IMG/VR virus record: IMGVR_UViG_3300046517_002304
Coordinates: 434,001-498,000 of that record
DNA length: 64,000 nt
Reading direction: 5' to 3' (one strand)
This document shows, piece by piece, positions 1 through 50,657 of this stretch; within the stretch, counting starts at the first letter, position 1, and each line of letters opens with the position of its first letter. The position numbers and the translations under genes are program-made. Below the pieces are notes generated by a model. That model ran no database searches. It saw nothing but the letters and a program-made list of their open reading frames with translations, and was not told the origin of the DNA.

Positions 1-484
1 CAAAAGCACAAATGGGAAAATCAACCCCTGTCGCCACTTCCTTACGATAATAACCATAGCCTACTCCTCCGCCTGTATCTTTTTTTTCAACTGATTCTGA
101 AGAAGTATCTCCGTCATGCATAAGCCGCTTCTTAACAGAAAAATTATAAGGATGCGACATTCTAACAATAAACTTAGCGGCATCCGTACGATGCACTGAT
201 GGGCAAAGAACAACACGTTTATTGCCATACTCATTATTTAATGCAATAACAGGAAGACAAGTTTTCTGACAAATAATGTCAGGCAAATCATTATCTACAG
301 CGCAAGACGCAAGAATACAAGGAGAAAAAATACTTTCTGCCCTTGCTAAAACAGTGTCTAACGCCGGACCAATGTTGGGTATGCGAAAAATTTGATGAGG
401 AATATTCCAAAACGACAAATCATTGGATAAGTACCCAACATCATCGCTCTCTTTATTAGTGGTTATTATAAATACGGGTTTCAC
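1..484 (-). CDS. PurE-fold protein, degenerate; runs off the left edge
   Basis: Not in ORF track. GTG at 484 overlaps the upstream TGA and the frame stays open to the edge: MKPVFIITTNKESD...FWNIPHQI...CILASCAVDNDLPDIICQKTCLPVIAL resembles PurE, but the SAHR motif is missing. Confidence 0.55.
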   Translation of the reverse strand, partial: MKPVFIITTNKESDDVGYLSNDLSFWNIPHQIFRIPNIGPALDTVLARAESIFSPCILASCAVDNDLPDIICQKTCLPVIALNNEYGNKRVVLCPSVHRTDAAKFIVRMSHPYNFSVKKRLMHDGDTSSESVEKKDTGGGVGYGYYRKEVATGVDFPICAF

Positions 485-1395
485 GGCTTCACCAACACCT
501 TCTCGGCACTTTTGTCACAGTATACGAATGTGTTCACCCAACCGGTTTCTTCCTTGCCAACAAACTTTGTATATCCATCTAAAAATCTGGTAATATACTT
601 GTTTGTCTGAGCGGAATAAGTATATGACCTCAATGCGTCTTTATAATTATCTTTCTTCTGATCATACAAAAGACCAGCTCTTACCAATATGGTAAACAAA
701 GATCTCTTCAGGGTATCGGCCCTCCAAAAACCAGATGGATCAATTTCAATAATATTGTACTGATTGGTTTCGTAAAACTTGGTGAACTCTTTTAATCCAA
801 GCTTTACTTCAAGTCTATGGATGAACCTAGCAACCCGACGAGATCTAAGACGGTAATCATTATAATTCTTAGCAGTTCCTTTGCTAATACTTACCGTACA
901 AAAGAACATCTTTTCCGTTTTTGCATGGAATGACTTAGCAAACTCTTCTCTACAATGAAACCACTTAACCGTACTGTTTTTCTCGTTATCAAACACCCCT
1001 AAGTGCTGACCTTGCGGCTCGTAGATAGAAAAGCAACATGCCCGCATTGGGCGAACCATTGGAATAATATACTTCGCCGACAAACTATCATATGTCTTTT
1101 TAATTTCTTCATTTTCCAACGTAGTTTTTGCAAACTCGCAACATTCATCTATAATATTTTGGTAGTTGCTTCTTTTAGCATCAATTCTATCAAACTTCGT
1201 ATAGATAGGCTCCCACTTGTCGCCCTTTTGATTCAAAACTAAGTAAACTGCGGTGTCTGTAGACAAAGGTTTCTTGGCAGCAACTACAGTTAACTTTCGC
1301 GTTGTTAAAAACACCCGTCCAGGCTTTACGAAATGCATCGTAACTTTGCCGGAACAATTATCAGATTTTAATTCGCAACTTCCAAGTAATCTCAT
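481..1395 (-). CDS. hypothetical protein, paralog family B (CR[ED]xF ... FW ... R-S motif)
   Basis: 304 aa ORF; C-terminal half aligns by eye with ORFs at 57596, 58584 and 59209. Confidence 0.8.
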   Translation of the reverse strand: MRLLGSCELKSDNCSGKVTMHFVKPGRVFLTTRKLTVVAAKKPLSTDTAVYLVLNQKGDKWEPIYTKFDRIDAKRSNYQNIIDECCEFAKTTLENEEIKKTYDSLSAKYIIPMVRPMRACCFSIYEPQGQHLGVFDNEKNSTVKWFHCREEFAKSFHAKTEKMFFCTVSISKGTAKNYNDYRLRSRRVARFIHRLEVKLGLKEFTKFYETNQYNIIEIDPSGFWRADTLKRSLFTILVRAGLLYDQKKDNYKDALRSYTYSAQTNKYITRFLDGYTKFVGKEETGWVNTFVYCDKSAEKVLVKP

Positions 1396-1404
1396 GATTA
1401 TCCC

Positions 1405-2148
1405 TTAGACATCAAGGATACGAACAGTACGACCAACGTTAGTTTTAACCTGAATAACTTTATTAATATAAGCATCTTCACGACCGGCGCATAAACTGAG
1501 CACTTCGGTTCTACCTTTAGATACTTCTCTTAAAACGTCATCTAGTTCTTTTGAGAAGAGAGCCTTGTTTTCATCTAACGCTATCTTGCTACATGGAGGG
1601 TAAGATGACAAAGATACAACCTTGCAATCAGATGTGTAATAATTATCAAAATACTCCTTAACACTGACAACTGTATTGTAATATGCATTCTTTGCGTAAA
1701 CCGGGGGATTATCACGAAGCATGGCTAAGGATAAATCATCAATATTATTGTGAGTATAATTACCAGCAGGAATATTATGGGGGAAAATTTCACATCCCAG
1801 TATCATCAGTTTTTCGCCATTATTAAATATGGCCCCAGAATTAGAAACATAATGCAACTTCGGGTATTTAGCACAAACCTTGATTATACTTTGACGCATA
1901 TGGTTAAGCGTGTAAAAAGCAAAATCATTAGCCCCGAGTATAAAATAAATATGGCAAGCTGAAACGCCGTGTATGACACGCAGATAATACTCAACAGAAT
2001 CATGTGCCGCAATATTACCGGCAATACATAAAACATCTAGTTTCTTTGTCTCAGTAGACAAATGGTCCAAAAATGCCTCTAAATTTTCAGAAGAAGCAAC
2101 GTGCAAATTGATGTTCGCTAAAAGTCCAATTTTCATGAACGATCCCAT
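1405..2148 (-). CDS. calcineurin-like metallophosphoesterase-fold protein with degenerate metal motifs
   Basis: IGLLANINLH / LCIAGNIA / FILGANDF occupy the DxH / GD / GNH motif positions. Confidence 0.65.
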   Translation of the reverse strand: MGSFMKIGLLANINLHVASSENLEAFLDHLSTETKKLDVLCIAGNIAAHDSVEYYLRVIHGVSACHIYFILGANDFAFYTLNHMRQSIIKVCAKYPKLHYVSNSGAIFNNGEKLMILGCEIFPHNIPAGNYTHNNIDDLSLAMLRDNPPVYAKNAYYNTVVSVKEYFDNYYTSDCKVVSLSSYPPCSKIALDENKALFSKELDDVLREVSKGRTEVLSLCAGREDAYINKVIQVKTNVGRTVRILDV

Positions 2149-2771
2149 AAAATAGTTTTTTGAATTTGTTTTAAGCCGACATTTGTTTCATAGTTGGAAT
2201 ATATCCAAGCTGGAATAATAGGATACTCCAAAAACGTATCTGGGTCAATATCTAAATTTCTTTCACCATCTAACCGATTTTGCTCATAAAAAATTGATTG
2301 GAAATTTTTGGGCAAAAGATTGACCGCTACGAGCGTTCGTACATAACCATATTCCCAAGGATATTCTATACAAAAACCCTCAAGGCGATCTACGCGGTCA
2401 ATCATCAAATCCCAATTCGCCTGGTTATAGAAAAAAACTTCTAGCGCGCCAGATGAATTTTTGTCAAAAGTCAATCCAAGTCCACGAGGAACAACGTGTG
2501 GGATAAATGCCTTGCTGTGACCATAATAACAATGATGCTCATGTCCTCTAGACGGGCAATCTTTGTGAACTCCCATTAGATAAGAATTAACATGCCGTCT
2601 CGGGAGATTCCTTAAAGTCCCAAACACTGCCATAGGAAATGGGAAGGCGTATCTCTGGCTTACAGGCGCAGCCAGAAAGCGATCATACAACTTCCAAAGA
2701 CCTTTGAGTTTAGGCGACAACCAACGCTCCCTTTTCTTCATTGTCGTCGTCGGATGATTCGTAAACAGCAA
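2133..2771 (-). CDS. gamma-glutamylcyclotransferase (AIG2-like) family protein
   Basis: AVFGTLR motif, LEVFFY, VDRLEG, YVRTLV; true start may be the ATG at 2741. Confidence 0.7.
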   Translation of the reverse strand: MLFTNHPTTTMKKRERWLSPKLKGLWKLYDRFLAAPVSQRYAFPFPMAVFGTLRNLPRRHVNSYLMGVHKDCPSRGHEHHCYYGHSKAFIPHVVPRGLGLTFDKNSSGALEVFFYNQANWDLMIDRVDRLEGFCIEYPWEYGYVRTLVAVNLLPKNFQSIFYEQNRLDGERNLDIDPDTFLEYPIIPAWIYSNYETNVGLKQIQKTILWDRS

Positions 2772-3051
2772 TCACGTCTTCAACTGGAATAAGGAACCGA
2801 TTCTCGCCGTCTTCATACGATGCAGGCATAGATCTAGCTAAACTACAAATAGCCTTTGAATACTTTCTAATGTTTACGTAATCAAAATCATGTTCTACCT
2901 GAGGCGAAACAGCAAGAATTCTACAATTTCTAGTAGGAATTTTAGCGGTATCGGGTAATGCAATTCCACCTTTTGTCATACCTGAATCGGCCTCTTTAAG
3001 CACCAATACTCTCGGGCCGGACGGAACAATAGAAGTTAATTCTTTTTTCAT
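2710..3051 (-). CDS. groES: co-chaperonin GroES-like
   Basis: IVPSGPRVLV...TKGGIALPDTAK...ILAVSP and C-terminal LIPVEDVIAV. Confidence 0.8.
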   Translation of the reverse strand: MKKELTSIVPSGPRVLVLKEADSGMTKGGIALPDTAKIPTRNCRILAVSPQVEHDFDYVNIRKYSKAICSLARSMPASYEDGENRFLIPVEDVIAVYESSDDDNEEKGALVVA

Positions 3052-3056
3052 AGTTT

Positions 3057-3744: not shown

Positions 3745-4959
3745 TCAAGCAACTTTTTTAGGCATACAGTGCAATTTTGCACTACCGCAAACAGATTCCT
3801 TGGTAACTACATAATCCATCGGCAAAATGTCAACCATTGTATCCAACAATAAGTTTTCAATAATAGTTTTTAGCGCTCTTGCTCCAGTTTTTTCTGCATG
3901 CGCTTTTTCGGCGATAGCTATAAGCGATTCTTCTGTAAAGTCTAAGCTGGCACCAGATAGCTTAAATATCGCGTCATACTGCTTGCAAAGAGAATTCTTG
4001 GTATCTCGCAAAATACTCACAAGAGCAGAAACGTCTAAGCTGGATAAAACCGTTTTCACTGGAAGTCTACCGACAAACTCTGGAATAAGACCATATTCAA
4101 TTAAGTCTTCATTAATAACGTCGGCTAATATATGTTCATTAAATCCATCGCTACCAAAACCGATTCGTTTTCTATTAGTTCTTTTAGCAACAATCTTATC
4201 AAGGTGAGTAAAAGCGCCGCCACAGATAAAAAGAATATTTGTAGTATCAACTGGAATATATGCTTGCTCAGGATGCTTTCTGCCACCTGCCGGAGGCACA
4301 TTAGCAATAGTGCCTTCCAGCATCTTTAGTAAAGACTGTTGAACTCCTTCTCCAGAAACATCCCTCGTAATTGAAACATTACTACTAGTTTTACTAATTT
4401 TATCTATTTCATCAATAAAGATAATTCCTCTTTGTGCCACTTCTACATTAAAGCTGCAATTATGCAACAATTTAAGAATTAAATTTTCAACGTCCTCTCC
4501 GACATACCCTGCTTGCGTCAGCGTAGTAGCATCGCCAATCGCCAACGGCACCGACAATATTTTTGCTAAGTTCTTAACTAAGGCTGTCTTACCGACGCCG
4601 CTGGGTCCGATCATTAAAACATTTGATTTTTCAATCTCTACATCTGTAGATGTAGAGAAAATTCTTTTATAGTGATTACTAACAGCAACCGATAAAACTT
4701 TTTTAGCATGACTCTGGCCGATGATATAATCGTCTAGTCTTTTAATAATCTCTAATGGTGATGGAATACTTTCCATCGTTTCCTGATTTAGATTTACTAT
4801 TGAGTTTTCTTTAAATATCCTTGTGCAATCTGATACGCAATCCAAACAAATATGGGTGCTTTCATCTTGCCCATGTACTAACTGCTTTGTCGCATTACCA
4901 ACTCCACAGAATGAACATTTTTTGCTGGGCATTTTTCGTCTTCGTGTGCTTTTCGCCAT
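3745..4959 (-). CDS. clpX: ClpX AAA+ unfoldase
   Basis: C4 zinc finger CSFC...CLDC, Walker A GPSGVGKT, Walker [22 protein letters not shown] loop RIGFG. Confidence 0.97.
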
Positions 4960-4970: not shown

Positions 4971-5297
4971 CTAAAAATAAAAAGAATAAAGAAATAATTC
5001 ATACAAACAAACTGCCGACAACAAAACGTTGGCTGTTGGAATAAGCCAAGCGCGGCCAAAAGAAATAATCCAACTTGGCCTGTGCTTTGAATAAAGCACA
5101 TAAACGCTAATGCCGACTACAAACATTGTAAGCAAAAACTTGAAGAAACACAACCCCAAAAACCCAAATTTTACCAGAAAAAACTCAGCAAATACGTTCA
5201 ATTCGTAAAAATTGTTAGGGCAATCAACCACTAGTAGTTTAGTTAGATATAAATCAATACAACTGAGAAAGATAAACAAAACATAATTTCGTATCAT
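4971..5297 (-). CDS. small membrane protein (DUF5658-like)
   Basis: Three hydrophobic segments; DLYLT...ELN...FG..GL..FK pattern. Confidence 0.6.
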
Positions 5298-6415
5298 TGC
5301 ATCAATTTAGTGTTCATTCCTCCAATTTTATCTAAATTATCAAAAAATAGCTTCATGGGAATATCACCACATCCCAAAACAGCTTTCTTACTTGAGAGAC
5401 TCTTATTGGCTATCAGGCTTGTGACTGATGCTGCCGTAAAGCCAGTTGTTTTCTGCATAGCAGTAAAAATGTCATCGTGCTCAACGCAAACACGACGAAC
5501 CCAATGTCCATTTTTATTCACGATACTTGCGCTAATTAAAACTTTATCTTTTCTCGTCTTCGGGCATGCGTTTTTAACCGCTCTACGAAACGTATCTTCA
5601 TCCATTTTACAATCGCCCAACAAAAATTTAATCAGCTTACAATGGCCACCATATCTTATTGTTTTATAATCACACTCTTTAACCCCGCGAGTCATTAGAG
5701 ATGGCAACAAGCCACCGACTCCACCTTTAGTATTAAATGCCTCAAGATATTCTACGGTACAAAAATTTTTAGTGCTTACGTCACATAAAAATTCTATTTG
5801 TTCTATATCCTCTAACGCTGTAACCTTGGTAATTTTTGAATCTTTAATCGCATCGCATTGACCGACATATTCATTATAAAGACCATCCAAACTAAAGACT
5901 TGATTATACTGCAATAAATTGTTCGGATTAATCGGCAATCCGCCTACTCTTAACTTTATTACCGCATTACTTAAGTCTGATACAGTTTGTATACCATTTT
6001 CTAATATTAAACCAACTAATCCAGGTGCCAATCCCAATGAAACAAAGCAAGATTGCTCGCTGTTATAAAATCCACCTTCATTAAAATAACCCTCAATCTC
6101 CTGGTCTACCACTGGATTGCCGCCTAAATCTGTATAGCTACGTTTTAATTCAATACAATTTTTAGCAATATCCTGATTAGCCCAATATGGCGCAGCCGAT
6201 ATTACCGTAGCATCTTTGACCTCAGATAAATCTTCTAAATCTTCAGCAACCCCATCAATACCAATTTGGTTGCAATCAAAGAATGCAATGGCGTCTAGCA
6301 AAGAGCTACTATTAGGTTCTACCATATAAATAGGGTGATTCAATTTAGACAAGCCATAAACAATGGCCCGACCCATTTCACCACCAGCACCGACCACAAT
6401 AACGGGTTTATTCAT
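5294..6415 (-). CDS. saccharopine dehydrogenase / lysine 6-dehydrogenase-like NAD(P) oxidoreductase
   Basis: GAGGEMG Rossmann motif, YTDLGG, GLAPGL, VGGLP, FSLDGLYNEY. Confidence 0.85.
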   Translation of the reverse strand: MNKPVIVVGAGGEMGRAIVYGLSKLNHPIYMVEPNSSSLLDAIAFFDCNQIGIDGVAEDLEDLSEVKDATVISAAPYWANQDIAKNCIELKRSYTDLGGNPVVDQEIEGYFNEGGFYNSEQSCFVSLGLAPGLVGLILENGIQTVSDLSNAVIKLRVGGLPINPNNLLQYNQVFSLDGLYNEYVGQCDAIKDSKITKVTALEDIEQIEFLCDVSTKNFCTVEYLEAFNTKGGVGGLLPSLMTRGVKECDYKTIRYGGHCKLIKFLLGDCKMDEDTFRRAVKNACPKTRKDKVLISASIVNKNGHWVRRVCVEHDDIFTAMQKTTGFTAASVTSLIANKSLSSKKAVLGCGDIPMKLFFDNLDKIGGMNTKLMQ

Positions 6416-8426: not shown

Positions 8427-8446
8427 CTTTTATGATTAAGTAATTA
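8344..8446 (+). ncRNA. putative TnpB omega/reRNA 3' scaffold plus guide
   Basis: Hairpins CCGTG-AGTTC-CACGG (8346-8360) and GCTTAC-AATGG-GTAAGC (8402-8418) overlap and follow the tnpB 3' end; boundaries inferred. Confidence 0.45.
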
Positions 8447-8821
8447 AGCAGGTAAAGTACCGTCACTCTTAAGGAGCGATAATTTTTGCAAAACTTCTTT
8501 TCGCATGATTTTGACGCTTGTCGGAGCATCAATCCCAATTCGCGTTGAATCCCGAGAAACTCTGACACATGTAATGCCAACATCTATATCAGCACCACCA
8601 TCATCAAGCTTTAGCTGTACGCTATCTTTAGGATTCAGCGTAAATTCATGCCATCCACCTTCTGATATTTCGAAATCAGGGAAGATAACTTGAGGGTGAG
8701 CGCTAATACCCAAATGAGCTTGGCCATTCCTAGCGGAAAAACAAATCAACGTAACGTCCGCAATATTAGCGCCTGTAGACAACTTGATCTCTTCTCCGGC
8801 TTTCCTCGTCAAAACCAACAT
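8444..8821 (-). CDS. csrA: CsrA/RsmA-family translational regulator, tandem two-domain form
   Basis: Starts MLVLTRKAGEEI, ends RIGIDAPTSVKIMRKEV; 125 aa, about two CsrA units. Confidence 0.85.
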   Translation of the reverse strand: MLVLTRKAGEEIKLSTGANIADVTLICFSARNGQAHLGISAHPQVIFPDFEISEGGWHEFTLNPKDSVQLKLDDGGADIDVGITCVRVSRDSTRIGIDAPTSVKIMRKEVLQKLSLLKSDGTLPA

Positions 8822-22547: not shown

Positions 22548-23369
22548 TTAATACAAAGGGGAGTAAATGTCAAGATAGTATTTCTTTGGAGTTTTGCCAG
22601 ACTTCATATCGTGCGATAAATCAAATACATACTTCTCAAACTGATGATTGAACTCTTCGTATGAAGAAAAACCGTAATATTCCTTCACTACTTGTAGTGG
22701 CCCCATCGCACAAAAAGACTCCATGTCTTTCGCTGGAAATTCTTTTTTCAGAAAAAGACACAACATTGTGCTTTGCACTCTATTCCATTTGTCAATATTT
22801 TTAGAATTAACATCTTGCTGAAGAATTTCATCCGCCGTGCAATGCTCATCTTTCAACATGTCCTCTGCCTGCATAAGAGTTTCATATATGTCTGATTCGC
22901 TTCCATTCAAAACAGAAATGCCAGTAATCATCCACTTAGGAAACTTTATCTTATTCGCTATTTCATATTCACGCAAACATGCTTCCGTCAATTTTTCTGA
23001 TAAATCTGAGTCTCTCCAATCGCCATCTACGCAAGTCCAAATAACAGAAATATCTTTTCCATCATGTATTAACGAAGCGCGATAAACTGACTTGTCAAGG
23101 TTAAAAAACTTCTTATATAGATCCTTATTGTCAATACAAATAACCATACACTTTCTTGAGAATTTAATATCATCAAATCCCCATCGCTTAAATATAGACT
23201 CTTTCATAAACTCTACGTGCTGAGACAAATACTCAGATTTGCCTTCGTGGTTTGATAAGATTTCAAAATTATTCGTCTCATTAGAATAAAGCTTAACCTT
23301 CTGATCGCCAATTTCTACATGAGTATCTGCCGCAACAAACAAAAGTGCGAAAGCAAGCAAGTTATACAT
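22548..23369 (-). CDS. secreted protein, possibly a degenerate gluzincin-like fold
   Basis: Signal-like N-terminus; SEKLTEACL...PKWMITGIS resembles HExxH...PxWxxEG without the ligands. Confidence 0.4.
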   Translation of the reverse strand: MYNLLAFALLFVAADTHVEIGDQKVKLYSNETNNFEILSNHEGKSEYLSQHVEFMKESIFKRWGFDDIKFSRKCMVICIDNKDLYKKFFNLDKSVYRASLIHDGKDISVIWTCVDGDWRDSDLSEKLTEACLREYEIANKIKFPKWMITGISVLNGSESDIYETLMQAEDMLKDEHCTADEILQQDVNSKNIDKWNRVQSTMLCLFLKKEFPAKDMESFCAMGPLQVVKEYYGFSSYEEFNHQFEKYVFDLSHDMKSGKTPKKYYLDIYSPLY

Positions 23370-34784: not shown

Positions 34785-34805
34785 ACAATATAATAGCGAA
34801 AGCTA

Positions 34806-35108
34806 TTACTTCTTATCAAACGATATACCAACAAGATTGCCGTCATCTACGAAATCAATCGTAGTTCCCTTGACCTTTTCTTTGGACTCTTGGTCGCATA
34901 TAAACTTTAATCCACCGTGCTCACAAACTAAATCACCAGAATCCTTTTCCGATGTAATTTGAAACGTATACTGAAAATCATCATCGTCAGAAATAACGCC
35001 TATTCTAACAAAAATATCAGCCCCACCCTTTTTGGCATCTGCCCAAATTGGCGAAGAGTCAATAGCCTTTTTAATTTCCGTAGACGCCTTATCTGTAATC
35101 GTTAGCAT
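34806..35108 (-). CDS. IscA/HesB-fold protein lacking the Fe-S cysteines
   Basis: MLTITDKA...VRIGV...GLKFICDQES...GTTIDFVD; GCSG replaced by SDDDD, CGCG tail absent. Confidence 0.75.
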   Translation of the reverse strand: MLTITDKASTEIKKAIDSSPIWADAKKGGADIFVRIGVISDDDDFQYTFQITSEKDSGDLVCEHGGLKFICDQESKEKVKGTTIDFVDDGNLVGISFDKK

Positions 35109-35133
35109 GTTTTTTTCCTTACCTTAATTAATT

Positions 35134-36928: not shown

Positions 36929-36938
36929 AGATTGTTCC

Positions 36939-37226
36939 TTAGAAGTACCCTTCTCGCTCAAGTTCCACGAACCTGAATTCACCAGAATTCATCATATCAG
37001 TAGCGATGGAAAGAGTCAATGCGGATTCTACGTAAATTTCAAAAATACCAGGCTGAAAAAAACTTCTAATAGTACAATTTGGAGCAAACGATTTTACTAA
37101 GTACGATCCATAATCTTGCTCCACTCCAAGCTTTGTGCAGACATAAAGCTTCCCTGGTCTAAACTTAACCTCGCGACCGTTCCAAGTAGTCGTTTCACTT
37201 TTTCTGAAAAAACCATCACTCTTCAT
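36939..37226 (-). CDS. possible stand-alone subtilase pro-domain-like (I9-type) protein
   Basis: FRPGKLYVCTKLGV...FEIYV...SGEFRFVE pattern. Confidence 0.4.
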   Translation of the reverse strand: MKSDGFFRKSETTTWNGREVKFRPGKLYVCTKLGVEQDYGSYLVKSFAPNCTIRSFFQPGIFEIYVESALTLSIATDMMNSGEFRFVELEREGYF

Positions 37227-37241
37227 AAAGACCTAACTTTC

Positions 37242-38864
37242 TTAAATAATTTTTTGCAACTTAGATGTCATACGCTCTAGTGTAGCAGAACGATCTTTTT
37301 TGTCAAGAACAACATTGATAATATACAAATCTTTACTCAATAAAGCTTCAGAGAAGGCAGAGTCTAATTCTGTTTCGGTGTTAACAAGCCGCCCGACACC
37401 ACGACCAATAATCTGAGGCAACAAGTGGTACTGCCAATTAGGAATATCGTTAAAACTACCGTCAATCAAAAATCGCTCTACCGTATAGCCGCCGTTATTC
37501 AGCACAACAATAATAGGATTTAGCTTATTGCTAGCTATCGTTGATATTTCCATTCCAGTCATCTGAAATGCTCCATCGCCAACCAATACAATCGGTCTAA
37601 CATCCGGTTTAGCAATCTGAACACCCAGGGCAGCAGGAATAGAGAATCCCATGGATGTATAAAATGCCTGTGATAAAAAGTTGTTACTGTGATGAACAAC
37701 TAGCTCATTAGAGCCGAATAAGCTGTCGCCTATGTCTGCAATTATTGCCATATTCTTGTCTAAAACAGCATTAATTTTTTCAAATAATCTCTTGACCGTA
37801 ATTTTCTCATTCTTAGGAGAAAAAACTGCTCTTGTCTTCATTTCGCCAACAATCGGAATTCGATCAGAAGAAATATTAGACTTAATTAACCCATTAACAA
37901 AATCTTGGAAAAGAACATTTTCATAGTAATGATTTCGCACTCCCATTTTTTCAGTAGTGCAAAATATCGTTCTATCTTTACGAAGAACAGATGGCTTAAA
38001 TCCAAAGTTAATGTCAGTAATCATCACGCCCAACATAATTAAGCAATCTGATTCCTCAACCTTTTGCTTAACTTCTGGGCTACTAGCATCCCCACAATAA
38101 ACACCTATAGATATCGGATGATTTTCATTTGTCAAACTCTTACTCAACATAGTTGTAGCAATGGGAATATTATACTTTCTAGCAAACTTGGTAATGACTT
38201 CGCCCATACCAAATCTAGCTAATTCAATGCCCGCCAAAATTACAGGGTTTTTACTTGAGTTGATCCAATTAATAGATTCCTGCAAAGCTTCCGCTAAATT
38301 TATCTTATCACTCTCTGTAGCTTTAGGAGAGCCGACCGTAAATGCATCATAGCTAATAGTTGTGTCCACCATATCTCTGGGGACTTCAATATAAACAGGT
38401 TGCTTATGCTGCTTCATGGCCAGAAGCACCCGATCAATTTCATAAGCCGCCATTACCGGATTATCTAATACACAAGAAGCGCAGGTCACATGTTTAAAAA
38501 TCTCAAACTGAGTATCATAAGAACCAACAGCATGATGCAGCGTCATTCCGCCGGCTCTCTCCTTTTTCCCGGGAGAACCGCTAATAACAACAACCGGAGA
38601 TTTTTCTGCGAAAGCGCCCCCGATAGAATTTAATAGTTTAAACCCACCGACGCAATAAGTGGTGCATACACAGCCAATACCGTTAACTCTGGCATATGCG
38701 TCAGCGGCGAACCCAGCGCACTGTTCGTCAGTAGTGCCGATTACAGGAAGAGATTTAGAAAACTGATTATACAAATTAAGAACGAAATCGCCAGGAACTC
38801 CAAAAATATGCTTTACACCACACTCTTTAAGACGAGAAATCAAAAATTGTGCAACTGTTGGCAT
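37242..38864 (-). CDS. TPP-dependent 2-keto-acid decarboxylase (indolepyruvate/phenylpyruvate/pyruvate decarboxylase family)
   Basis: FGVPGDF, DEQCAGFAADAYAR, LHH, GDGAFQMTGME...NNGGY TPP motif. Confidence 0.92.
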   Translation of the reverse strand: MPTVAQFLISRLKECGVKHIFGVPGDFVLNLYNQFSKSLPVIGTTDEQCAGFAADAYARVNGIGCVCTTYCVGGFKLLNSIGGAFAEKSPVVVISGSPGKKERAGGMTLHHAVGSYDTQFEIFKHVTCASCVLDNPVMAAYEIDRVLLAMKQHKQPVYIEVPRDMVDTTISYDAFTVGSPKATESDKINLAEALQESINWINSSKNPVILAGIELARFGMGEVITKFARKYNIPIATTMLSKSLTNENHPISIGVYCGDASSPEVKQKVEESDCLIMLGVMITDINFGFKPSVLRKDRTIFCTTEKMGVRNHYYENVLFQDFVNGLIKSNISSDRIPIVGEMKTRAVFSPKNEKITVKRLFEKINAVLDKNMAIIADIGDSLFGSNELVVHHSNNFLSQAFYTSMGFSIPAALGVQIAKPDVRPIVLVGDGAFQMTGMEISTIASNKLNPIIVVLNNGGYTVERFLIDGSFNDIPNWQYHLLPQIIGRGVGRLVNTETELDSAFSEALLSKDLYIINVVLDKKDRSATLERMTSKLQKII

Positions 38865-38875
38865 TATACTCTCTC

Positions 38876-39676
38876 CTATGTAAGAGATTCCGATGTTGGT
38901 GATTGTTGAACCTTGATGACAAAACTGCCATCTGTAGGAAACCTACGAACCCATTCCACGCCTTCGCCAATAAAACATCCATATTCACTAGGAGTAAAAC
39001 TAGTAAAGCTTGGTGTTGAAATTGATAATGAATTTACCATACTCATAGATGTCGTCATCTTTAATAACTTAAACTCAAAATTAAAACACCCAGGAACACA
39101 AGTATCATTAGAGAGCCATTCATAAACAAGTTGGCTTTTAGTTAAAACATTAGTAGAAACTGTTCCATCAACCTGAAGCTGATCTTCGTAAGTTAACTCC
39201 GTCTGAGCAACAGAATTCAAAACCCTAAATATTTTTAAACAAGTGCCCTTTTTATAATCGCCAACTGGTGTACCATTATACCCTCTAAGAACTTGCACCA
39301 ACTTAAGATTTTCGTCAAACCCAGTAATTAGCATCTGCTCTGGATTACGAACTCTACTCACAACTATAATATCGCCAACCAACGCCTGCTGAAAACCAAT
39401 ACCGTCTGCTAAAGCAAAATAAGTGTCTGTAGACGTAATAGCTGATTTAAGCTTCGCATTCGCCCACATACTCGCTTCTAATACAAGTCCAGTTAAATCT
39501 ATCGGACCATTACAATCTGAAATAGCAACTTTAAACGGAGGCTTGGTGTCATGCTGTTTGATCTGGAAATCTGGGCAACTTCCATCACAATTAAACTCAT
39601 CGGGACACCCGCCATTACAATTAGTTGAACTAGCAAAACTGTTTAAATTACTTGAATTACTTTGAGAGCATGTCAT
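38876..39676 (-). CDS. BppU-N-like virion/baseplate protein
   Basis: FQIKQHDTKPPF...GPIDLTG; TATATA 5 nt before ATG. Confidence 0.55.
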   Translation of the reverse strand: MTCSQSNSSNLNSFASSTNCNGGCPDEFNCDGSCPDFQIKQHDTKPPFKVAISDCNGPIDLTGLVLEASMWANAKLKSAITSTDTYFALADGIGFQQALVGDIIVVSRVRNPEQMLITGFDENLKLVQVLRGYNGTPVGDYKKGTCLKIFRVLNSVAQTELTYEDQLQVDGTVSTNVLTKSQLVYEWLSNDTCVPGCFNFEFKLLKMTTSMSMVNSLSISTPSFTSFTPSEYGCFIGEGVEWVRRFPTDGSFVIKVQQSPTSESLT

Positions 39677-39699
39677 ACCATTATATATCTTGCACTAAA

Positions 39700-40245
39700 T
39701 CAAGAAAATAATTCTGGCACTTGCAACTCCATAATCCCTATCTTATCTTTAACCCAATGAAGGTTGCCGCCATATCTCTCTATTTTAACGCTATGATAAG
39801 ATTTGCTTAAAAACTCAAAAGTTTTTTTATAGTCTTTAGGCAGACCATAAGGCTTTTTAGGTGCATATACAATCCGCCGAATGCCACGATCAAGTATGTT
39901 TACCACCGAGTCAGGATGAGGAATAGTAGTAATATACAAACTAAACGCAAAAAAATTAGTTTCCTTATCAGAAAGCGCTCTTAAAACCTTGATTTCAGCA
40001 GGAACGATAAAATCATAAATTTTTGGATTGTCCCAAGACAATTTAAACGGATTGGCAGCATAAGTTGGGACATCACCTATCGGATAGGTGAAAGCCATAG
40101 CTCTTATTTCTTCCTTATCCGCTAAAACAGCTCCAGACTGGCAATAAGGATCTACCGATGCCCATGACGCAATTACAGCGTGCATCATCATCCGATGATC
40201 TAATGCGACAATATCCCTGGCATTCTTTTCCTGAAACTGAAACAT
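39700..40245 (-). CDS. dCMP-deaminase-fold protein lacking zinc ligands
   Basis: SVDPYCQSGAVL, VPAE (for HAE), LYITTIPHPDS (for PCxxC), GIRRIVY. Confidence 0.75.
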   Translation of the reverse strand: MFQFQEKNARDIVALDHRMMMHAVIASWASVDPYCQSGAVLADKEEIRAMAFTYPIGDVPTYAANPFKLSWDNPKIYDFIVPAEIKVLRALSDKETNFFAFSLYITTIPHPDSVVNILDRGIRRIVYAPKKPYGLPKDYKKTFEFLSKSYHSVKIERYGGNLHWVKDKIGIMELQVPELFS

Positions 40246-41411
40246 TATTCCGTCTTCAGCAGGTAAGACTTAGTTTCTTCCGTAAGCTCTTTAAGCCACT
40301 TAACATAGGGCGTTCCACCAGTACCGGTAGGATTATCACACTTTTTCTGGATATAGTCAACAGCATACCCAAAGTGAATTTCCCGAAATCGGCATAACTG
40401 AAGAATGATGTTATTATAAGTAGCTCTTACATACTTGTCAAGTTTATTATTAATAATTCCATCTCTGATATTAACCGATGATCCTTCAAGGTGCGAAACA
40501 AACCCACGGTGATTCCTGGGCATATACTTTCTCATATCATCAAGATGATGAGTCAAAATAGACTGCTGATGCTTAACTCCGAAAGCTGCCAATACAGCAG
40601 GAACAATAGAACTTTGAGCACCCGTTTCGCCTCTAAAAGACTGCTCTTTTGCACCACTAAAGAACGAACAGCTCGGAACATTTTCATACACTACATTTTC
40701 AAAACCAAAAATATAAGGTCTAACCTTACGGAAATAAACATCTGGGCTACACTTTTCTGGCATCCTTTCTAAAACCGTATTAATCCCTTTAAAAGAACTG
40801 CATATAACCTCTAGATTCTCGGCAAAGAAATCATCATTTGGCGCTTTACCGCTATCAAGAAACTCCGTTAAATTATAAATGCTTTTCAGCAATCTCCCTG
40901 CCCTAGCTTCAATTTCAACATGAACTAGAATAAACCAATCTTCATCATAAATATTATTAAATTTTTGAATTAACTGAATATTACCAAGCGATATATCAGA
41001 ATTCTTATCGATTCTCTTCCAGTTGTTCAATGCATAATCAGCATACGACAAAATCGGCGGTCTACCAACAATCTCTGACAAAGCACAAAGAGGACGAGCA
41101 ATCGCACTAGGGATATGCTTAACAACTCCAGCTTGGCCGTGCACATAAGCAGATGCAAAATAAGCATAAATCATCCTAAGTCGGTTTAAAACACCGCGCT
41201 CTTTATGCTCTTTAAGAGCCGAATAAGAGATATCGTATATCGGCAAGGTGTCTAGGGTAATTCTTACCTTACTGGACTGAACATGAGAAGGTAATTCATA
41301 GGCCACCTTATCCAAATAACTAAACCCAGAACCACTGGGCAATCGCTCAATCGGGTCTGGGCTAGCAAGAAATCCTCTGTCTTCATGAACGGTGGGATAA
41401 AATTCAGTCAT
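40245..41411 (-). CDS. indoleamine 2,3-dioxygenase family heme enzyme
   Basis: RPPILSYADY, DEDWFILVHVEIE, VRPYIFGF, FRGETGAQSS, proximal His in FREIH, GTGGTP. Confidence 0.92.
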   Translation of the reverse strand: MTEFYPTVHEDRGFLASPDPIERLPSGSGFSYLDKVAYELPSHVQSSKVRITLDTLPIYDISYSALKEHKERGVLNRLRMIYAYFASAYVHGQAGVVKHIPSAIARPLCALSEIVGRPPILSYADYALNNWKRIDKNSDISLGNIQLIQKFNNIYDEDWFILVHVEIEARAGRLLKSIYNLTEFLDSGKAPNDDFFAENLEVICSSFKGINTVLERMPEKCSPDVYFRKVRPYIFGFENVVYENVPSCSFFSGAKEQSFRGETGAQSSIVPAVLAAFGVKHQQSILTHHLDDMRKYMPRNHRGFVSHLEGSSVNIRDGIINNKLDKYVRATYNNIILQLCRFREIHFGYAVDYIQKKCDNPTGTGGTPYVKWLKELTEETKSYLLKTE

Positions 41412-45586: not shown

Positions 45587-46084
45587 TTAATTCCTTGCTT
45601 TTGCAGGGGAACCAATTTTGTCAATTGTAATTCCAAAACTATGATCAATCTCATGGGCATAAACAGCCGCAAAATCTGAGACTACCATATCAACATCTTT
45701 CAACACAATTTCATTTTTAGCAATAATTTGCTTACCAATCACTCGGATGCTTTTATGACGAGAAACGACGTAAAACTTCAAGTTACCACTGGCATCTTTC
45801 AAAGATAAACATCCTTCATAAGATTCATACACTTCTTCGCCCACTGGCTCGTACCTACAGTTTACCCAATGCGAAAAGCCATGTAAATAGTTTTCTGAAG
45901 AAAGACTGTTTTTTATCACAAAAAGATTAAGCGGAATGCCAACTTGTGTTGCGGATAATCCAACGCCCTGCTCTTTTACGCACAAAACACTTAGCGCTGT
46001 AGCCAGCTTAAAAGCATCAACCAACTTGGTTTCATCAACAGCTTCAGCTAACGGAATTTTATCAGGAGCAACCAGCTTATACAT
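45587..46084 (-). CDS. def: peptide deformylase
   Basis: GVGLSATQVG, EGCLS, HEIDH all present. Confidence 0.9.
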   Translation of the reverse strand: MYKLVAPDKIPLAEAVDETKLVDAFKLATALSVLCVKEQGVGLSATQVGIPLNLFVIKNSLSSENYLHGFSHWVNCRYEPVGEEVYESYEGCLSLKDASGNLKFYVVSRHKSIRVIGKQIIAKNEIVLKDVDMVVSDFAAVYAHEIDHSFGITIDKIGSPAKARN

Positions 46085-48959: not shown

Positions 48960-48990
48960 AAATTAACCTAGTAATTCGTCCACAGAACTT

Positions 48991-49416
48991 CTAGCCATCT
49001 AAACAGCAATCCTTTATTTCAACTACAAATAAACCCTTCGTTTGCTCAATTTCGGGAGGATCGTATCCATCCATTTTAGCACTGCCTTCTCGTAAATAAT
49101 TTCCAATTTTATCTTTAAAGTTATTTTTGTTCGTTGTTCCGTATTGCCAGCCATTTCGGAACTTTACATTCTCATGGAGCCAATCATAAAAGTGGGCATC
49201 TGGAATATTAATATTGTCAACAAATGTTCCCGTATAATCCATTTTTTCTTTTACACACTTTGCAATATGCTTGCCTGCTTGATCTATAAAATTTGTAGCA
49301 TCTTCTTTCGATGCAAATGATGCTACAAAATCAATATATTCAATATATGAAAAGTCATCCGCCACAGGTGAGGGATAATAAGAACAATTCGGTCTAACTA
49401 CAGCAAAACAACTCAT
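48991..49416 (-). CDS. hypothetical protein
   Basis: 141 aa ORF. Confidence 0.65.
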   Translation of the reverse strand: MSCFAVVRPNCSYYPSPVADDFSYIEYIDFVASFASKEDATNFIDQAGKHIAKCVKEKMDYTGTFVDNINIPDAHFYDWLHENVKFRNGWQYGTTNKNNFKDKIGNYLREGSAKMDGYDPPEIEQTKGLFVVEIKDCCLDG

Positions 49417-49724
49417 TGAATCTTCTCCATTTCCTTAATCTGCTTGTACATGTTATATCTTTTAAACCCATCGAAAGTAGTATTCCTACGAATATCGGAA
49501 TACTTGTCACTCCAAACAATTCCATATCTTATCTGCGCAATCCCACTAGCCATGCATCCATCATAATCATCTGGAATATAAACATAATCATCGCTAGCAA
49601 AAACATAACCTGCGTCTAAAACGATCTGCTTCTCCTCAAGAGATAAGGGGCGATTCATGTATTCATTAAATTCTTTAATCTCTTGTTCTGTAGGCATAAC
49701 CTGCACATTACTCTCAATTTTCAT
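49413..49724 (-). CDS. hypothetical protein
   Basis: 103 aa ORF. Confidence 0.65.
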   Translation of the reverse strand: MKIESNVQVMPTEQEIKEFNEYMNRPLSLEEKQIVLDAGYVFASDDYVYIPDDYDGCMASGIAQIRYGIVWSDKYSDIRRNTTFDGFKRYNMYKQIKEMEKIQ

Positions 49725-50130
49725 AAATCAAATTTTTTTCTTTTAAAAATGAAACAATGCTAAAATGATTGTTATCTTCAAGTGCATTACTTGCCACCTT
49801 GCCATAAACATCCACCAAAATACCATCTTTTGATTTAGAATGCACAAACAAATTAGCACTGCTACAACTCTGAAGCACATCTGCCATAGCGTCACGGCCA
49901 CCTTCTTTGACCTTTAAATATAACTTTACAAAGTACGACTTTCCATCAATCATAACAGACAAATCGTTATCAGATAAAATATTAAGATTTTCCAGCGGGT
50001 ATTCTTTGCCAACATCCAATGAAGACATAACTGTAGCTGTCGGCGTATGAAAGTAATTCTTAATTCTCTCTCTTCCAAGCCATAACACTAATAAAAGCAA
50101 CGCCGCTAATGCCATGAGTTCAATTTTCAT
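49714..50130 (-). CDS. membrane-anchored protein, possibly a degenerate thermonuclease (SNase) fold
   Basis: N-terminal TM; ILSDNDLSV..DGK..VKL...GRDA...ILVDVY...SIVSFL follows SNase spacing without DGDT/DxPE. Confidence 0.4.
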   Translation of the reverse strand: MKIELMALAALLLLVLWLGRERIKNYFHTPTATVMSSLDVGKEYPLENLNILSDNDLSVMIDGKSYFVKLYLKVKEGGRDAMADVLQSCSSANLFVHSKSKDGILVDVYGKVASNALEDNNHFSIVSFLKEKNLIYEN

Positions 50131-50657
50131 GCCTGCTTCTCCTCATGCTCATCAATAGCCTGCTTAATCTGAAGCAAGTCTTCATACCAAAGACCGTACC
50201 GAGAAATTGACTTGGAGAATACAGAGATATCAAGTTGCGCAACTTCCCAGCATACGCTTCCATCATCATTGTACTTAATGTTTGTAGAGTATTTTGTACA
50301 ACCGCGTTCATCCTTTACTTTTACCTGCTTACCGTTCTCCTCTATTGTCTCGGGAAGATACTTCGGACTTATCCTTGATAAATTAAGATCTAAAAGTGCT
50401 TCGCGCTGAGCGTCATTGCATATATCAAGCCAGGCATCAGATGAAATAACAATCGCCATTTCATACTGTTCGCCAATCCATATCTTGGATAGCGGCGAAA
50501 ACTTAGATACCTTACCCCAATTAAATTTATTTCTTATAAACGGCTTAGCATCACAAAAAGCCAGCGCAATCGTGGCCAACTCAAGATTTGGGTGATTCTT
50601 TAATTTAACTTCCTGAAGCTTAGCTGCTTCAACTGGACCGGCTTTCCAAATTAACAT
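50127..50657 (-). CDS. phage metallopeptidase-like protein with HExxH lost
   Basis: IVISSDAW...QREALLDLNLSRI where DHELxH is expected. Confidence 0.55.
   Translation of the reverse strand: MLIWKAGPVEAAKLQEVKLKNHPNLELATIALAFCDAKPFIRNKFNWGKVSKFSPLSKIWIGEQYEMAIVISSDAWLDICNDAQREALLDLNLSRISPKYLPETIEENGKQVKVKDERGCTKYSTNIKYNDDGSVCWEVAQLDISVFSKSISRYGLWYEDLLQIKQAIDEHEEKQA

What the first reader, a model, noticed from the sequence alone, without database searches (positions are those of the whole stretch)
1..50657. Repeated pattern of catalytically dead enzyme homologues
Seen: five intact ORFs keep a recognisable fold but lose the catalytic or metal ligands: PurE-like (1-484), metallophosphoesterase (1405-2148), IscA (34806-35108), dCMP deaminase (39700-40245) and phage metallopeptidase (50127-50657). 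Weaker cases: gluzincin-like (22548-23369) and SNase-like (49714-50130). None has a frameshift, and neighbouring enzymes (PDF, IDO, decarboxylase, ClpX, PhoH) keep their motifs, so this is not general decay. Inference: a repertoire of pseudoenzymes kept as decoys, ligand sponges or dominant-negative subunits of host oligomers.
Basis: partly seen in the sequence, partly recalled or inferred. Interest (0 to 1): 0.72.

Follow-up and report, generated by a model that had tools for sequence, protein, structure and literature searches.

The report
Ligand-less enzyme homologues in huge phage
A 511-kb soil/rhizosphere phage carries at least six intact genes with recognisable enzyme folds but without their catalytic or metal-binding residues; the losses happened at different times and look like ordinary re-use of enzyme folds, not a demonstrated decoy arsenal.

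Summary

**Strongly supported, fold and missing ligands:**
- Metallophosphoesterase-like (1405-2148).
- IscA-like (34806-35108).
- dCMP-deaminase-like (39700-40245).
- PhageMetallopep-like (50127-50657).
- Peptidase_MA/gluzincin-like (22548-23369), one of the two "weaker" cases.

**Moderately supported:** "PurE-like" 1-484. It is only the N-terminal domain of a 464-aa protein that runs off the window; the C-terminal part gives weak beta-propeller hits.

**Unsupported:** SNase-like (49714-50130).

**The losses differ in age.**
- The two peptidase-like proteins lack HExxH in every homologue recovered here from huge-phage and viral contigs (an old loss).
- The phosphoesterase-like and PurE-like proteins share their losses with one distant syntenic relative.
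- The deaminase-like and IscA-like losses are specific to this lineage. Syntenic orthologues in related huge phages keep HAE/PCxxC (7 of 9) and the three cysteines (6 of 6), and this genome holds intact paralogues.

**Selection.** For the deaminase-like gene dN/dS is about 0.3, an upper bound. All the genes are intact, and the one stretch checked (34700-40400) is identical in four other metagenomes.

**Reading.** Independent exaptation of enzyme folds into non-catalytic roles is the best fit. The decoy, sponge or dominant-negative idea is untested. This is a modestly interesting evolutionary case, not a new kind of system.

The parts
1..484 (-). N-terminal PurE/AIRC-like domain (about 120 aa plus linker) of a 464-aa protein whose C-terminal ~300 aa lie outside the window (G000:433090-434000) and give weak beta-propeller hits. 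The PurE motifs GSxSD, SAHRTP and AAHLPG are not conserved.
   Evidence: Full ORF. PurE HMM 9.3 bits against at most 1.4 for 500 shuffles. hhalign two-sequence profile: probability 86%, P 6e-6. Orthologue L156:5989-7362 is 31% identical overall, N-terminal domain 41%. Weak WD40/beta-propeller Pfam hits in the C-terminal part, best E 6e-6, all below curated cut-offs.
1405..2148 (-). Metallophosphoesterase-fold protein with all canonical metal and catalytic positions replaced. The likely true start is Met5, giving 243 aa.
   Evidence: The syntenic relative P0025 (L156:4374-5075, 33-35% identity) is also ligand-less.
22548..23369 (-). Peptidase_MA/gluzincin-fold protein with a hydrophobic, signal-peptide-like N-terminus (read by eye, not run through a predictor). 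No HExxH; the would-be active-site helix 123-139 has no His.
   Evidence: AF2 pLDDT 79.7, pTM 0.80. Foldseek PDB hits to M9, M1, M61 and M30. AFDB Peptidase MA-like and DUF1570. Atlas Peptidase_MA_2, TM 0.68. 15 homologues, none with HExxH. His positions.
34806..35108 (-). Cys-less A-type Fe-S carrier (IscA/SufA/HesB) homologue, 100 aa, next to a full DnaJ gene (33723-34784).
   Evidence: PF01521 at 36.1 bits. PDB SufA/IscA at 1e-4. TIGR00049 at 40 bits, below its cut-off. Alignment with six intact orthologues and the own intact paralogue.
39700..40245 (-). dCMP-deaminase-fold protein without the three Zn ligands (H to P, C to H/R, C to S/N). The catalytic Glu and the DPxxQxG loop are kept. 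Its start overlaps the IDO stop by 1 nt.
50127..50657 (-). PhageMetallopep (PF18894) homologue in which HExxH is replaced by LNLSR. The same loss is seen in all 20 aligned clade members.
49714..50130 (-). The fold is not supported. It is the conserved, overlapping downstream partner gene of the PhageMetallopep homologue.
   Evidence: No Pfam or PHROG hit in any of five members. hhalign against an SNase profile: P 0.14. Adjacency in G003, G006, G009 and G012 from the coordinates.
37242..41411 (-). Context block around the deaminase-like gene: TPP enzyme (indolepyruvate/phenylpyruvate-decarboxylase-like, 37242-38864), a conserved Cys-rich 266-aa protein (38876-39676), the deaminase-like gene, and IDO (40245-41411).

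Best explanation
**What it is.** The window comes from a complete 511-kb huge phage found in soil and rhizosphere metagenomes. It encodes at least six proteins descended from enzyme or metal-cluster-carrier families that have lost the residues needed for catalysis or metal binding. They are kept as intact, constrained genes.

**How they arose (shown).** The losses are independent events of different ages.
- **Old.** The PhageMetallopep-like protein and the Peptidase_MA-like protein with a signal-peptide-like N-terminus lack HExxH in every homologue recovered here, most of them on huge-phage or other viral contigs.
- **Intermediate.** The metallophosphoesterase-like protein and the PurE-like domain share their losses with one distant syntenic relative. 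That pair is only 31-35% identical.
- **Recent.** The deaminase-like and IscA-like proteins lost their Zn and Fe-S ligands only in this phage's immediate lineage. The syntenic orthologues of related huge phages are still canonical.

**Likely mechanism (inferred).**
- Redundancy came first. This genome has three canonical deaminase-family genes and a Cys-bearing IscA paralogue.
- Catalytic constraint on the ancestral copy was then released. It diverged quickly, shown by a long stem branch and 24-30% identity against 41-62% for flanking genes.
- It was then retained for a non-catalytic role that uses the surviving surfaces. For the deaminase fold that means nucleotide or partner binding, since the catalytic Glu and the DPxxQxG loop are kept. 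For the IscA fold it means partner binding.

**What is not known.** The actual partners and ligands of all six are unknown. This is ordinary exaptation of enzyme folds in a fast-evolving genome, not a single designed repertoire.
For: **Genome.** One contig with overlapping ends, IMG/VR record with direct terminal repeats, rated 100% complete. Seen in soil and rhizosphere runs.

**Fold and ligand loss.** See the observation check.

**Different ages**
- All 20 PhageMetallopep relatives and all 15 Peptidase_MA-like relatives lack HExxH.
- P0025 and L156 share the MPE and PurE-like losses in a syntenic block: SacDH, ClpX, GroES, MPE, 297 aa, 457 aa.
- 7 of 9 deaminase orthologues and 6 of 6 IscA orthologues are canonical, in the same gene order and spacing as the window.

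**Redundancy.** Canonical HAE/PCxxC genes lie at G000 203.4, 20.9 and 147.2 kb, and a second Fe-S_biosyn gene with Cys lies at 230.9 kb. Complete or near-complete relatives have only 1-2 deaminase genes.

**Burst, then constraint.** The ligand-less deaminase clade has 100/100 support, a stem of 2.17 and internal branches of 0.23-0.57. 63 invariant columns are shared by three lineages at 48-63% identity. dN 0.47 against dS 1.49.

**Not artefacts.** Four other runs match window 34700-40400 with zero differences.
Against: - No biochemical or expression data. No RNA run was listed.
- dS is at or near saturation in every available comparison, so dN/dS values are rough upper bounds.
- The ligand-less genes are among the faster-evolving genes in their blocks: deaminase-like omega about 0.31 against IDO 0.06; MPE-like 33% identity against ClpX 66%. 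Partly relaxed selection cannot be separated from a new function.
- Redundancy is a correlation from a handful of genomes, several of them fragments.
- The three canonical deaminase-family paralogues may have different substrates.
- The PurE-like assignment rests on moderate profile statistics only.
- No partner or ligand was identified for any protein. The complex prediction gave no answer.
Confidence: 0.6

Rival explanations
1. The proteins are a deliberately kept repertoire aimed at the host. They act as decoys for host enzymes or defences, as sponges for metabolites or nucleotides, or as dominant-negative subunits that poison host oligomers such as the IscA dimer or the dCMP-deaminase hexamer.
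For: - The folds belong to families known to oligomerise (general knowledge).
- The deaminase-like protein keeps its substrate-loop motif and the catalytic Glu, which fits ligand binding without turnover.
- The genes are conserved and intact.
- The window is rich in host-takeover-type genes: sigma factor, CsrA, IF3, PDF, DnaJ, ClpX and GroES.
Against: - No evidence of any kind for a host target. The host is unidentified.
- No hit to defence-related families.
- The losses are of very different ages and in unrelated pathways, which argues against a coordinated set.
- The phage encodes its own intact paralogues, so phage-internal partners are at least as likely.
- The Peptidase_MA-like protein has a signal-peptide-like N-terminus and the 'SNase-like' protein a membrane-anchor-like one. 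Both would then not be cytoplasmic decoys.
Confidence: 0.15
2. Relics in slow decay. At least the two recent cases, deaminase-like and IscA-like, are functionless leftovers made redundant by other copies. They have not yet been interrupted or deleted.
For: - Intact orthologues in relatives and intact paralogues in this genome.
- Much lower identity to relatives than flanking genes.
- Omega is higher than for neighbouring enzymes.
- The IscA-like protein is C-terminally shortened.
- Two more deaminase orthologues (L027, L030) have also lost their ligands, so loss is easy.
Against: - Three ligand-less deaminase lineages at 48-63% identity keep the ORF, 63 invariant columns and the same substituted motif. 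dN is well below dS.
- Synteny and the 1-nt start/stop overlap with IDO are conserved in the related JGI contig carrying P0002.
- A 100-aa Fe-S_biosyn orthologue of the same shortened length is present in that related contig.
- Phage genomes usually delete useless DNA quickly (general knowledge).
Confidence: 0.15
3. Still enzymes. The proteins catalyse reactions with non-canonical active sites or metals. For example, the Asn-for-Asp/His replacements in the phosphoesterase fold might still hold a metal, or the deaminase fold might use the retained Glu without Zn.
For: - The deaminase-like protein keeps the catalytic Glu and the substrate loop.
- In the MPE-like protein three ligand positions are Asn, which can coordinate metals.
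- The Peptidase_MA-like clade keeps a conserved C..E on the would-be active-site helix.
Against: - All three Zn ligands are gone from the deaminase, and one replacement position varies (H/R) within the clade.
- In the MPE-like protein all canonical positions in all five motifs are changed, including His to Ser, Gly and Glu, and its nearest relative has different replacements.
- The PhageMetallopep position corresponding to the catalytic Glu varies among N/H/Q/C/L/M.
- The IscA-like protein has no Cys at any ligand position.
Confidence: 0.1

Closest known systems
Pseudoenzymes in general, for example Vps29 (metallophosphoesterase fold without metal ligands, a retromer scaffold) and ADAT3/Tad3 (deaminase-fold partner lacking the catalytic Glu, paired with active ADAT2). 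Cited from general knowledge, not tested here.
   Same: An enzyme fold is retained, catalytic or metal residues are lost, and the gene is kept intact and constrained. Origin by duplication or redundancy with an active paralogue in the same genome, as seen here for the deaminase and IscA cases.
   Different: No partner, scaffold role or regulatory function has been shown here. The deaminase-like protein loses the Zn ligands but keeps the Glu, which is the opposite of ADAT3.
Pfam PF18894 PhageMetallopep (putative phage metallopeptidase)
   Same: The candidate scores above the gathering cut-off and aligns along the domain. The conserved ..ALL/IxH-HExxH.. helix region aligns with the candidate's REALLDL-NLSR.
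   Different: HExxH is absent in the candidate and in all 20 aligned relatives. The clade carries a roughly 60-aa C-terminal extension with invariant Trp, Asp and Gly positions.
Peptidase_MA_2 (PF13485) / DUF1570 / M9 collagenase peptidase domain (gluzincins)
   Same: Overall fold: N-terminal beta-sheet with helix plus a helical C-terminal half. TM 0.6-0.7 to predicted models, and Foldseek E 4e-4 to M9 structures.
   Different: No HExxH and no His on the corresponding helix in any of 15 homologues. No sequence-level family hit.
A-type Fe-S carriers IscA/SufA/ErpA (PF01521, TIGR00049)
   Same: Domain-level sequence homology along residues 2-99.
   Different: All three cluster-ligating Cys are missing, and the C-terminal CGCG tail is deleted. 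The score is below the NCBIfam subfamily cut-off.
ComEB/T4-type dCMP deaminases (PF00383) of related huge phages
   Same: Syntenic orthologue in the conserved block TPP enzyme, 266-aa protein, deaminase. It shares the C-terminal GNLxW extension and the DPxxQxG loop.
   Different: Zn ligands replaced. No Pfam hit. Long branch. IDO inserted immediately upstream.

Membership tests
Calcineurin-like metallophosphoesterase (PF00149/PF12850) | Sequence or fold homology to family members | tested here: met
   Atlas TM 0.83 and feature score 0.96. phmmer E 5e-9 to 9e-4 to proteins of which 21/23 hit PF00149.
Calcineurin-like metallophosphoesterase (PF00149/PF12850) | Five metal/catalytic motifs: DxH, GD, GNH[DE], H, GHxH | tested here: not met
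   A3: NIN, GN, GAND, S, GRE at the aligned positions. No Pfam hit at E<=1.
CMP/dCMP deaminase (PF00383) | Homology and fold | tested here: met
   Atlas TM 0.74. 24-30% identity, E down to 8e-12, to syntenic phage orthologues that score 54-75 bits on PF00383.
CMP/dCMP deaminase (PF00383) | Zn ligands: H/C of (H/C)AE and both Cys of PCxxC | tested here: not met
   PAE and P[HR]P[DE][SN] in all three clade members.
CMP/dCMP deaminase (PF00383) | Catalytic Glu of HAE | tested here: met
   E84 is invariant in the three-member clade alignment A1 and nearly invariant in the wider alignment A8.
A-type Fe-S carrier (PF01521; IscA/SufA/ErpA) | Pfam gathering threshold | tested here: met
   36.1 bits against 26.3.
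A-type Fe-S carrier (PF01521; IscA/SufA/ErpA) | Three conserved Cys (Cx(n)CxC) that ligate the cluster | tested here: not met
   Asp at Cys1, and the protein ends before CGCG. Below the TIGR00049 cut-off.
PhageMetallopep (PF18894) | Pfam gathering threshold | tested here: met
   26.4 bits against 23.7. All 19 relatives carry the precomputed PF18894 hit.
PhageMetallopep (PF18894) | Zincin HExxH helix | tested here: not met
   The canonical L091 has HELRH. The candidate has LNLSR, and the clade has L[NHQCLM]L[ST]R.
PurE / AIR carboxylase (PF00731) | Sequence-profile membership | tested here: inconclusive
   No Pfam hit. Own PurE HMM 9.3 and 14.6 bits at Z=1. hhalign probability 27% with one sequence and 86% with two. 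Atlas 0.86 to another flavodoxin-like family. AF2 failed.
PurE / AIR carboxylase (PF00731) | Catalytic SAHRTP His and the GxAAHLPG loop | tested here: not met
   Aligned positions lack both His in the candidate and in L156.
Gluzincin / Peptidase_MA clan | Fold | tested here: met
Gluzincin / Peptidase_MA clan | HExxH plus a downstream Glu ligand | tested here: not met
   No HExxH in 15 homologues. No His on helix 123-139.
Staphylococcal nuclease (PF00565) | Sequence-profile similarity | tested here: not met
   hhalign P 0.14, and HMM scores no better than shuffles. No Pfam hit in five members.
Pseudoenzyme (operational definition) | Actual lack of catalytic activity, and a non-catalytic function | not testable with these tools
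   Needs purified protein, metal analysis and assays.

The most novel reading that the evidence does not exclude
This phage lineage systematically converts its own metabolic and maturation enzymes into host-directed poisons or sponges. Examples would be a Cys-less IscA that caps host A-type carriers next to a phage DnaJ, and a Zn-less deaminase that sequesters dCMP/dCTP or inactivates the host deaminase hexamer. On this reading the two recent ligand losses in one lineage are adaptive and linked to the insertion of IDO beside the deaminase gene.
Probability: 0.1. Interest if true: 0.75.

Novelty: new member of a known kind. Interest (0 to 1): 0.4.

Why it matters
**Annotation.** Huge phages are routinely credited with 'auxiliary metabolic genes' on the basis of fold or family hits. 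This window shows that a sizeable share of such hits, roughly six of about nineteen enzyme-fold genes here, can be catalytically incompetent. Of the six, only the IscA-like and PhageMetallopep-like proteins reach a Pfam threshold and would be named from it. The other four are recognisable only by fold or profile methods, which do not check ligands either. Function calls should therefore check ligand residues.

**Evolution.** The window also offers two clean natural experiments. The syntenic deaminase and IscA are intact in relatives and ligand-less here, with intact paralogues present. These are useful for studying how pseudoenzymes arise after redundancy.

**Targets for experiment.** Two conserved clades lack HExxH in every homologue recovered: the PhageMetallopep-like and the Peptidase_MA-like proteins. 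The PhageMetallopep-like gene is paired with a small gene whose product has a membrane-anchor-like N-terminus. These are concrete targets for finding non-catalytic functions in huge phages.

Tried and rejected
- **Deposited phages.** Megablast and tblastn found no match for the 1645-aa gene, the MPE-like, deaminase-like or PhageMetallopep-like proteins.
- **Single-protein scans of viral contigs.** Nothing for the deaminase-like or IscA-like proteins.
- **AF2 on the PurE-like domain without an alignment.** Failed at pLDDT 32, which cost one of the two structure jobs.
- **PDB sequence searches.** Only noise for five candidates and for the PhageMetallopep profile.
- **Pairwise MAFFT of the MPE-like protein with the genome's LpxH-like MPE.** Misaligned and discarded.
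- **First PF18894 search in 301 genomes.** The E-value cut-off of 1e-6 was too strict and returned only the copy already known. It was repeated at 0.01.
- **Literature search for the PF18894 motif.** Uninformative.
- **Metagenome scan.** Recovered only another contig of the P0003 lineage, not the 6-kb JGI contig. The close IscA-like orthologue could therefore not be read.
- **Complex prediction (IDO + 266-aa protein + deaminase-like).** Returned 'no answer' and is not used as evidence.
- **RNA runs.** None listed.
- **Laying DNA runs for within-population dN/dS.** The strains are identical, so there is no polymorphism.
- **PADLOC.** No hits.
- **Considered and rejected.** General genome decay: neighbouring enzymes are intact. 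Assembly error: identical in other runs. Alternative genetic code: the ORFs are long and intact under table 11.
- **Unpublished genome G057.** Its SNase locus L126 was left out of the profile, and no PurE locus from it was used.

Full report
**1. Setting**

The window is G000:C1:434001-498000 of a single 511,233-bp contig with 39% GC. Its ends overlap by about 127 nt, and it carries four tRNAs. It is an IMG/VR virus record with direct terminal repeats, rated 100% complete. The DNA is held by soil and rhizosphere metagenome runs.

Precomputed Pfam hits for the called genes give a typical huge-phage content:

| Gene | Window coordinates |
|---|---|
| GroES | 2710-3051 |
| ClpX | 3745-4959 |
| Saccharopine dehydrogenase | 5294-6415 |
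| TnpB | 7214-8386 (+) |
| CsrA | 8444-8821 |
| ParB | 8845-9987 |
| Methyltransferase | 16114-17010 |
| Sigma-70 | 23362-24009 |
| Amidoligase | 24030-25073 |
| 1645-aa Laminin_G_3 protein | 25148-30085 |
| PhoH | 30982-31665 |
| GT2 | 31999-32754 |
| DnaJ | 33723-34784 |
| IF3 | 36338-36982 |
| TPP enzyme | 37242-38864 |
| IDO | 40245-41411 |
| PDF | 45587-46084 |
| DnaE fragment | 51239-53689 (+) |

**2. The observation, case by case**

All seven ORFs are present on the minus strand as stated. Pfam and PHROGs recognise only two of them: IscA-like and PhageMetallopep. The other fold claims needed more sensitive tests.

*Metallophosphoesterase-like (1405-2148)*
- ESM Atlas: feature score 0.96 and structural TM 0.83 to Metallophos clusters.
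- An exhaustive phmmer search of 1.8 billion representatives gave 42 relatives. Of the 23 full-length ones aligned, 21 hit PF00149.
- In alignment A3 the family consensus is TDIHLN, GDIAE, LGNHDFY, LTHVPP and CGHTH. The candidate has ANINLH, GNIAA, LGANDFA, LSSYPP and CAGRED, so no canonical ligand survives.
- Its nearest relative, P0025 (35% identity), is also ligand-less, with partly different replacements.
- P0025 lies on contig L156, which is syntenic with the window's left end: SacDH, ClpX, GroES, MPE, a 297-aa ORF and a 457-aa ORF.
- None of 15 other related phage records has this gene.
- The genome has a canonical LpxH-like MPE elsewhere, at 242.2 kb.

*dCMP-deaminase-like (39700-40245)*
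- Atlas 0.93 and TM 0.74.
- Two close relatives exist, at 63% and 48% identity.
- All three share VPAE in place of HAE and TIP[HR]P[DE][SN] in place of PCxxC. E84 and the DPxxQxG loop are kept.
- Nine of 15 related huge-phage records carry an orthologue at 24-30% identity with the same C-terminal GNLxW extension.
- Seven of those nine keep HAE and PCxxC. Two (L027, L030) have lost them.

*IscA-like (34806-35108)*
- PF01521 at 36.1 bits, and SufA/IscA structures at about 1e-4.
- Cys1 is Asp, and the protein ends just before the CGCG tail.
- Six orthologues in related phages and a second gene in this genome (230.9 kb) keep those Cys.

*PhageMetallopep (50127-50657)*
- PF18894 at 26.4 bits.
- 19 relatives at 41-50% identity, several on contigs of 155-420 kb.
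- Alignment A2 shows LLDL[HNQCLM]L[ST]R at one helix.
- A canonical member from a bacterial genome (L091, 69.9 bits) has HELRH exactly there.
- Weak cross-hits of the profile at positions 62-97 are M48/HtpX AHELSHI helices.
- The HExxH is therefore lost across the whole clade.

*PurE-like (1-484)*
- This is the N-terminal 161 aa of a 464-aa protein.
- The C-terminal 300 aa give weak matches to several WD40/beta-propeller families, best E 6e-6, all below Pfam's curated cut-offs.
- There is no Pfam hit. The Atlas gives only 0.86, to another flavodoxin-like family. The AF2 single-sequence model failed.
- A PurE HMM built from 33 bacterial genes scores the candidate at 9.3 bits, against at most 1.4 bits for 500 shuffles. 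The match is co-linear at positions 42-81.
- With the orthologue from L156 (31% identity overall, N-terminal domain 41%), hhalign reaches probability 86%, P 6e-6 over 71 columns. The orthologue alone scores 14.6 bits.
- The catalytic SAHRTP and AAHLPG histidines are absent from both proteins.
- I rate this as moderately supported.

*Gluzincin-like (22548-23369)*
- No family hit in any of eight members.
- With a 15-sequence alignment AF2 gives pLDDT 79.7 and pTM 0.80.
- The best PDB matches are M9 collagenase peptidase domains, LTA4H/M1, M61 and M30.
- AFDB clusters give Peptidase MA-like and DUF1570 proteins at TM 0.6-0.67. The Atlas gives Peptidase_MA_2 at TM 0.68.
- None of 15 homologues has HExxH, and helix 123-139 has no His.
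- All members have a hydrophobic, signal-peptide-like N-terminus. This was read by eye, not run through a predictor.

*SNase-like (49714-50130)*
- No family hit in five members.
- hhalign against a profile of 29 true SNase domains gives P 0.14, and HMM scores are no better than shuffles.
- The fold is unsupported.

*Controls*
- PDF keeps EGCLS and HEIDH. ClpX keeps Walker A/B and two CxxC. PhoH keeps Walker A. The TPP enzyme keeps GDGA..NN. DnaJ keeps HPD and CxxCxGxG.
- Four other metagenome runs match window 34700-40400 without a single difference, so these ORFs are not assembly artefacts.

**3. What the comparison with relatives adds**

*Gene order.* In G014 the genes IscA (3.6 kb), deaminase (8.2 kb) and PhageMetallopep (17.7 kb) lie in the same order and with the same spacing as in the window (34.8, 39.7 and 50.1 kb). 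These are true orthologues.

*Conserved block.* The block TPP enzyme, 266-aa protein, deaminase is conserved across relatives. The flanking proteins are 41-56% and 54-62% identical to the window's. The deaminase-like protein is only 24-30% identical.

*Tree.* The three ligand-less sequences form a 100/100 clade on a stem of 2.17 substitutions per site, with short internal branches. The clade is nested among the huge-phage deaminases at 82/93 support. L027 and L030 are unresolved, so repeated independent losses are possible.

*Selection.*
- Against contig L002, the deaminase-like gene has dN 0.47 and dS 1.49, giving omega of about 0.31. IDO gives 0.06 and the 266-aa gene 0.09.
- Against L156, the MPE-like gene is 33% identical and the PurE-like/beta-propeller protein 31%. 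ClpX is 66%, and other unknown ORFs are 32-50%.
- dS is near saturation, so these are rough upper bounds.

*Redundancy.* This genome has three canonical deaminase-family genes besides the ligand-less one. The relatives sampled have one or two, and there the syntenic copy is intact.

*IDO.* It is absent from four of five relatives. In two of the three ligand-less-clade lineages (this phage and the JGI contig carrying P0002) it sits immediately upstream with a 1-nt stop/start overlap. In the third (L002) it is also immediately upstream, separated by a 47-nt gap.

**4. Interpretation**

- Two losses are old and clade-wide.
- Two are shared with one distant relative.
- Two are recent and specific to this lineage.

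This fits repeated, independent exaptation of enzyme folds. For the recent cases, loss of catalysis followed redundancy and the fold was then retained for a non-catalytic role.

The mechanism I commit to is inferred, not shown: ligand-binding or partner-binding proteins that act with the phage's own or the host's machinery. The rivals are host-directed decoys, slow decay and non-canonical catalysis. Each is scored in the rival explanations.

Nothing tested here speaks to host targets. The host is unknown, PADLOC gave nothing, no RNA run was listed, and the complex prediction returned no answer.

**5. Comparison and novelty**

Pseudoenzymes are a well-known phenomenon. Vps29 and ADAT3 are fold-mates of two of these proteins (general knowledge). 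The held literature has no systematic treatment of pseudoenzymes in phages.

These are new inactive members of known families, not a new kind of system. The useful lessons are practical. Family hits in huge phages should be checked for ligand residues before metabolic functions are claimed. The syntenic intact/ligand-less pairs are good material for studying how pseudoenzymes originate.

**6. Verdict**

| Question | Verdict |
|---|---|
| Observation | Largely confirmed: five main cases, one of them moderate; one of the two weaker cases |
| Interest | 0.4 |

Noticed in passing
window 37242-38864 (-) and 40245-41411 (-): The TPP enzyme's best NCBIfam match is indolepyruvate/phenylpyruvate decarboxylase (387 bits, below the equivalog cut-off). 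It lies 1.4 kb from an IDO (indoleamine 2,3-dioxygenase family) gene, in a phage seen only in soil and rhizosphere metagenomes. This may be a pair of auxiliary genes related to tryptophan or auxin metabolism.
   Followed up: partly
window 38876-39676 (-): A 266-aa protein of unknown family has 56 invariant columns, six of them Cys, across eight huge phages. It is always adjacent to the deaminase gene and the TPP enzyme. No Pfam, PHROG or PDB match.
   Followed up: partly
window 49714-50657 (-): The HExxH-less PhageMetallopep gene and the small downstream gene, whose product has a membrane-anchor-like N-terminus, overlap by 4 nt. They are adjacent in the same order in at least four related phage records (G003, G006, G009, G012). 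This is a conserved two-gene module of unknown function.
   Followed up: partly
window 7214-8386 (+): An IS605-type TnpB (OrfB_IS605, Cas12f1-like_TNB) lies on the opposite strand inside a long minus-strand gene block.
   Followed up: no
window 51239-53689 (+) and beyond the window end: DNA polymerase III alpha appears split. This 816-aa ORF has the DNA_pol3_alpha, finger and HHH_6 domains but no PHP domain. A separate ~444-aa minus-strand ORF just past the window end carries PHP plus the DNA_pol3_alpha N-terminal part.
   Followed up: no
L027 (G008) and L030 (G009), deaminase orthologues: Two further huge-phage deaminase orthologues have also lost HAE/PCxxC (TAVE/GPPMLRD and RPAE/TPSAEA). They do not resolve as sisters of this phage's ligand-less clade, so Zn-ligand loss may have recurred in this subfamily.
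   Followed up: partly
window 25148-30085 (-): A 1645-aa protein with repeated Laminin_G_3 domains. There is a faint Toxin_R_bind_N hit under the same stretch, from a related jelly-roll fold. It is probably a receptor-binding or fibre protein.
   Followed up: no
window 56246-56788 (-), 60073-60552 (-), 60556-60762 (-): A weak RelA_SpoT-like 180-aa ORF, a CAP-domain protein and a DksA/TraR-type zinc-finger protein lie in the right-hand part of the window. Together with CsrA, sigma-70, IF3, PDF, DnaJ, ClpX and GroES, the window holds an unusually rich set of host-physiology genes.
   Followed up: no
L050-L052 (bacterial MAG contigs): PhageMetallopep-clade genes sit on short contigs binned into Neisseriaceae, Myxococcales and Chloracidobacterium MAGs. 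The inconsistent taxonomy suggests phage contigs mis-binned into MAGs, so these give no reliable host clue.
   Followed up: no
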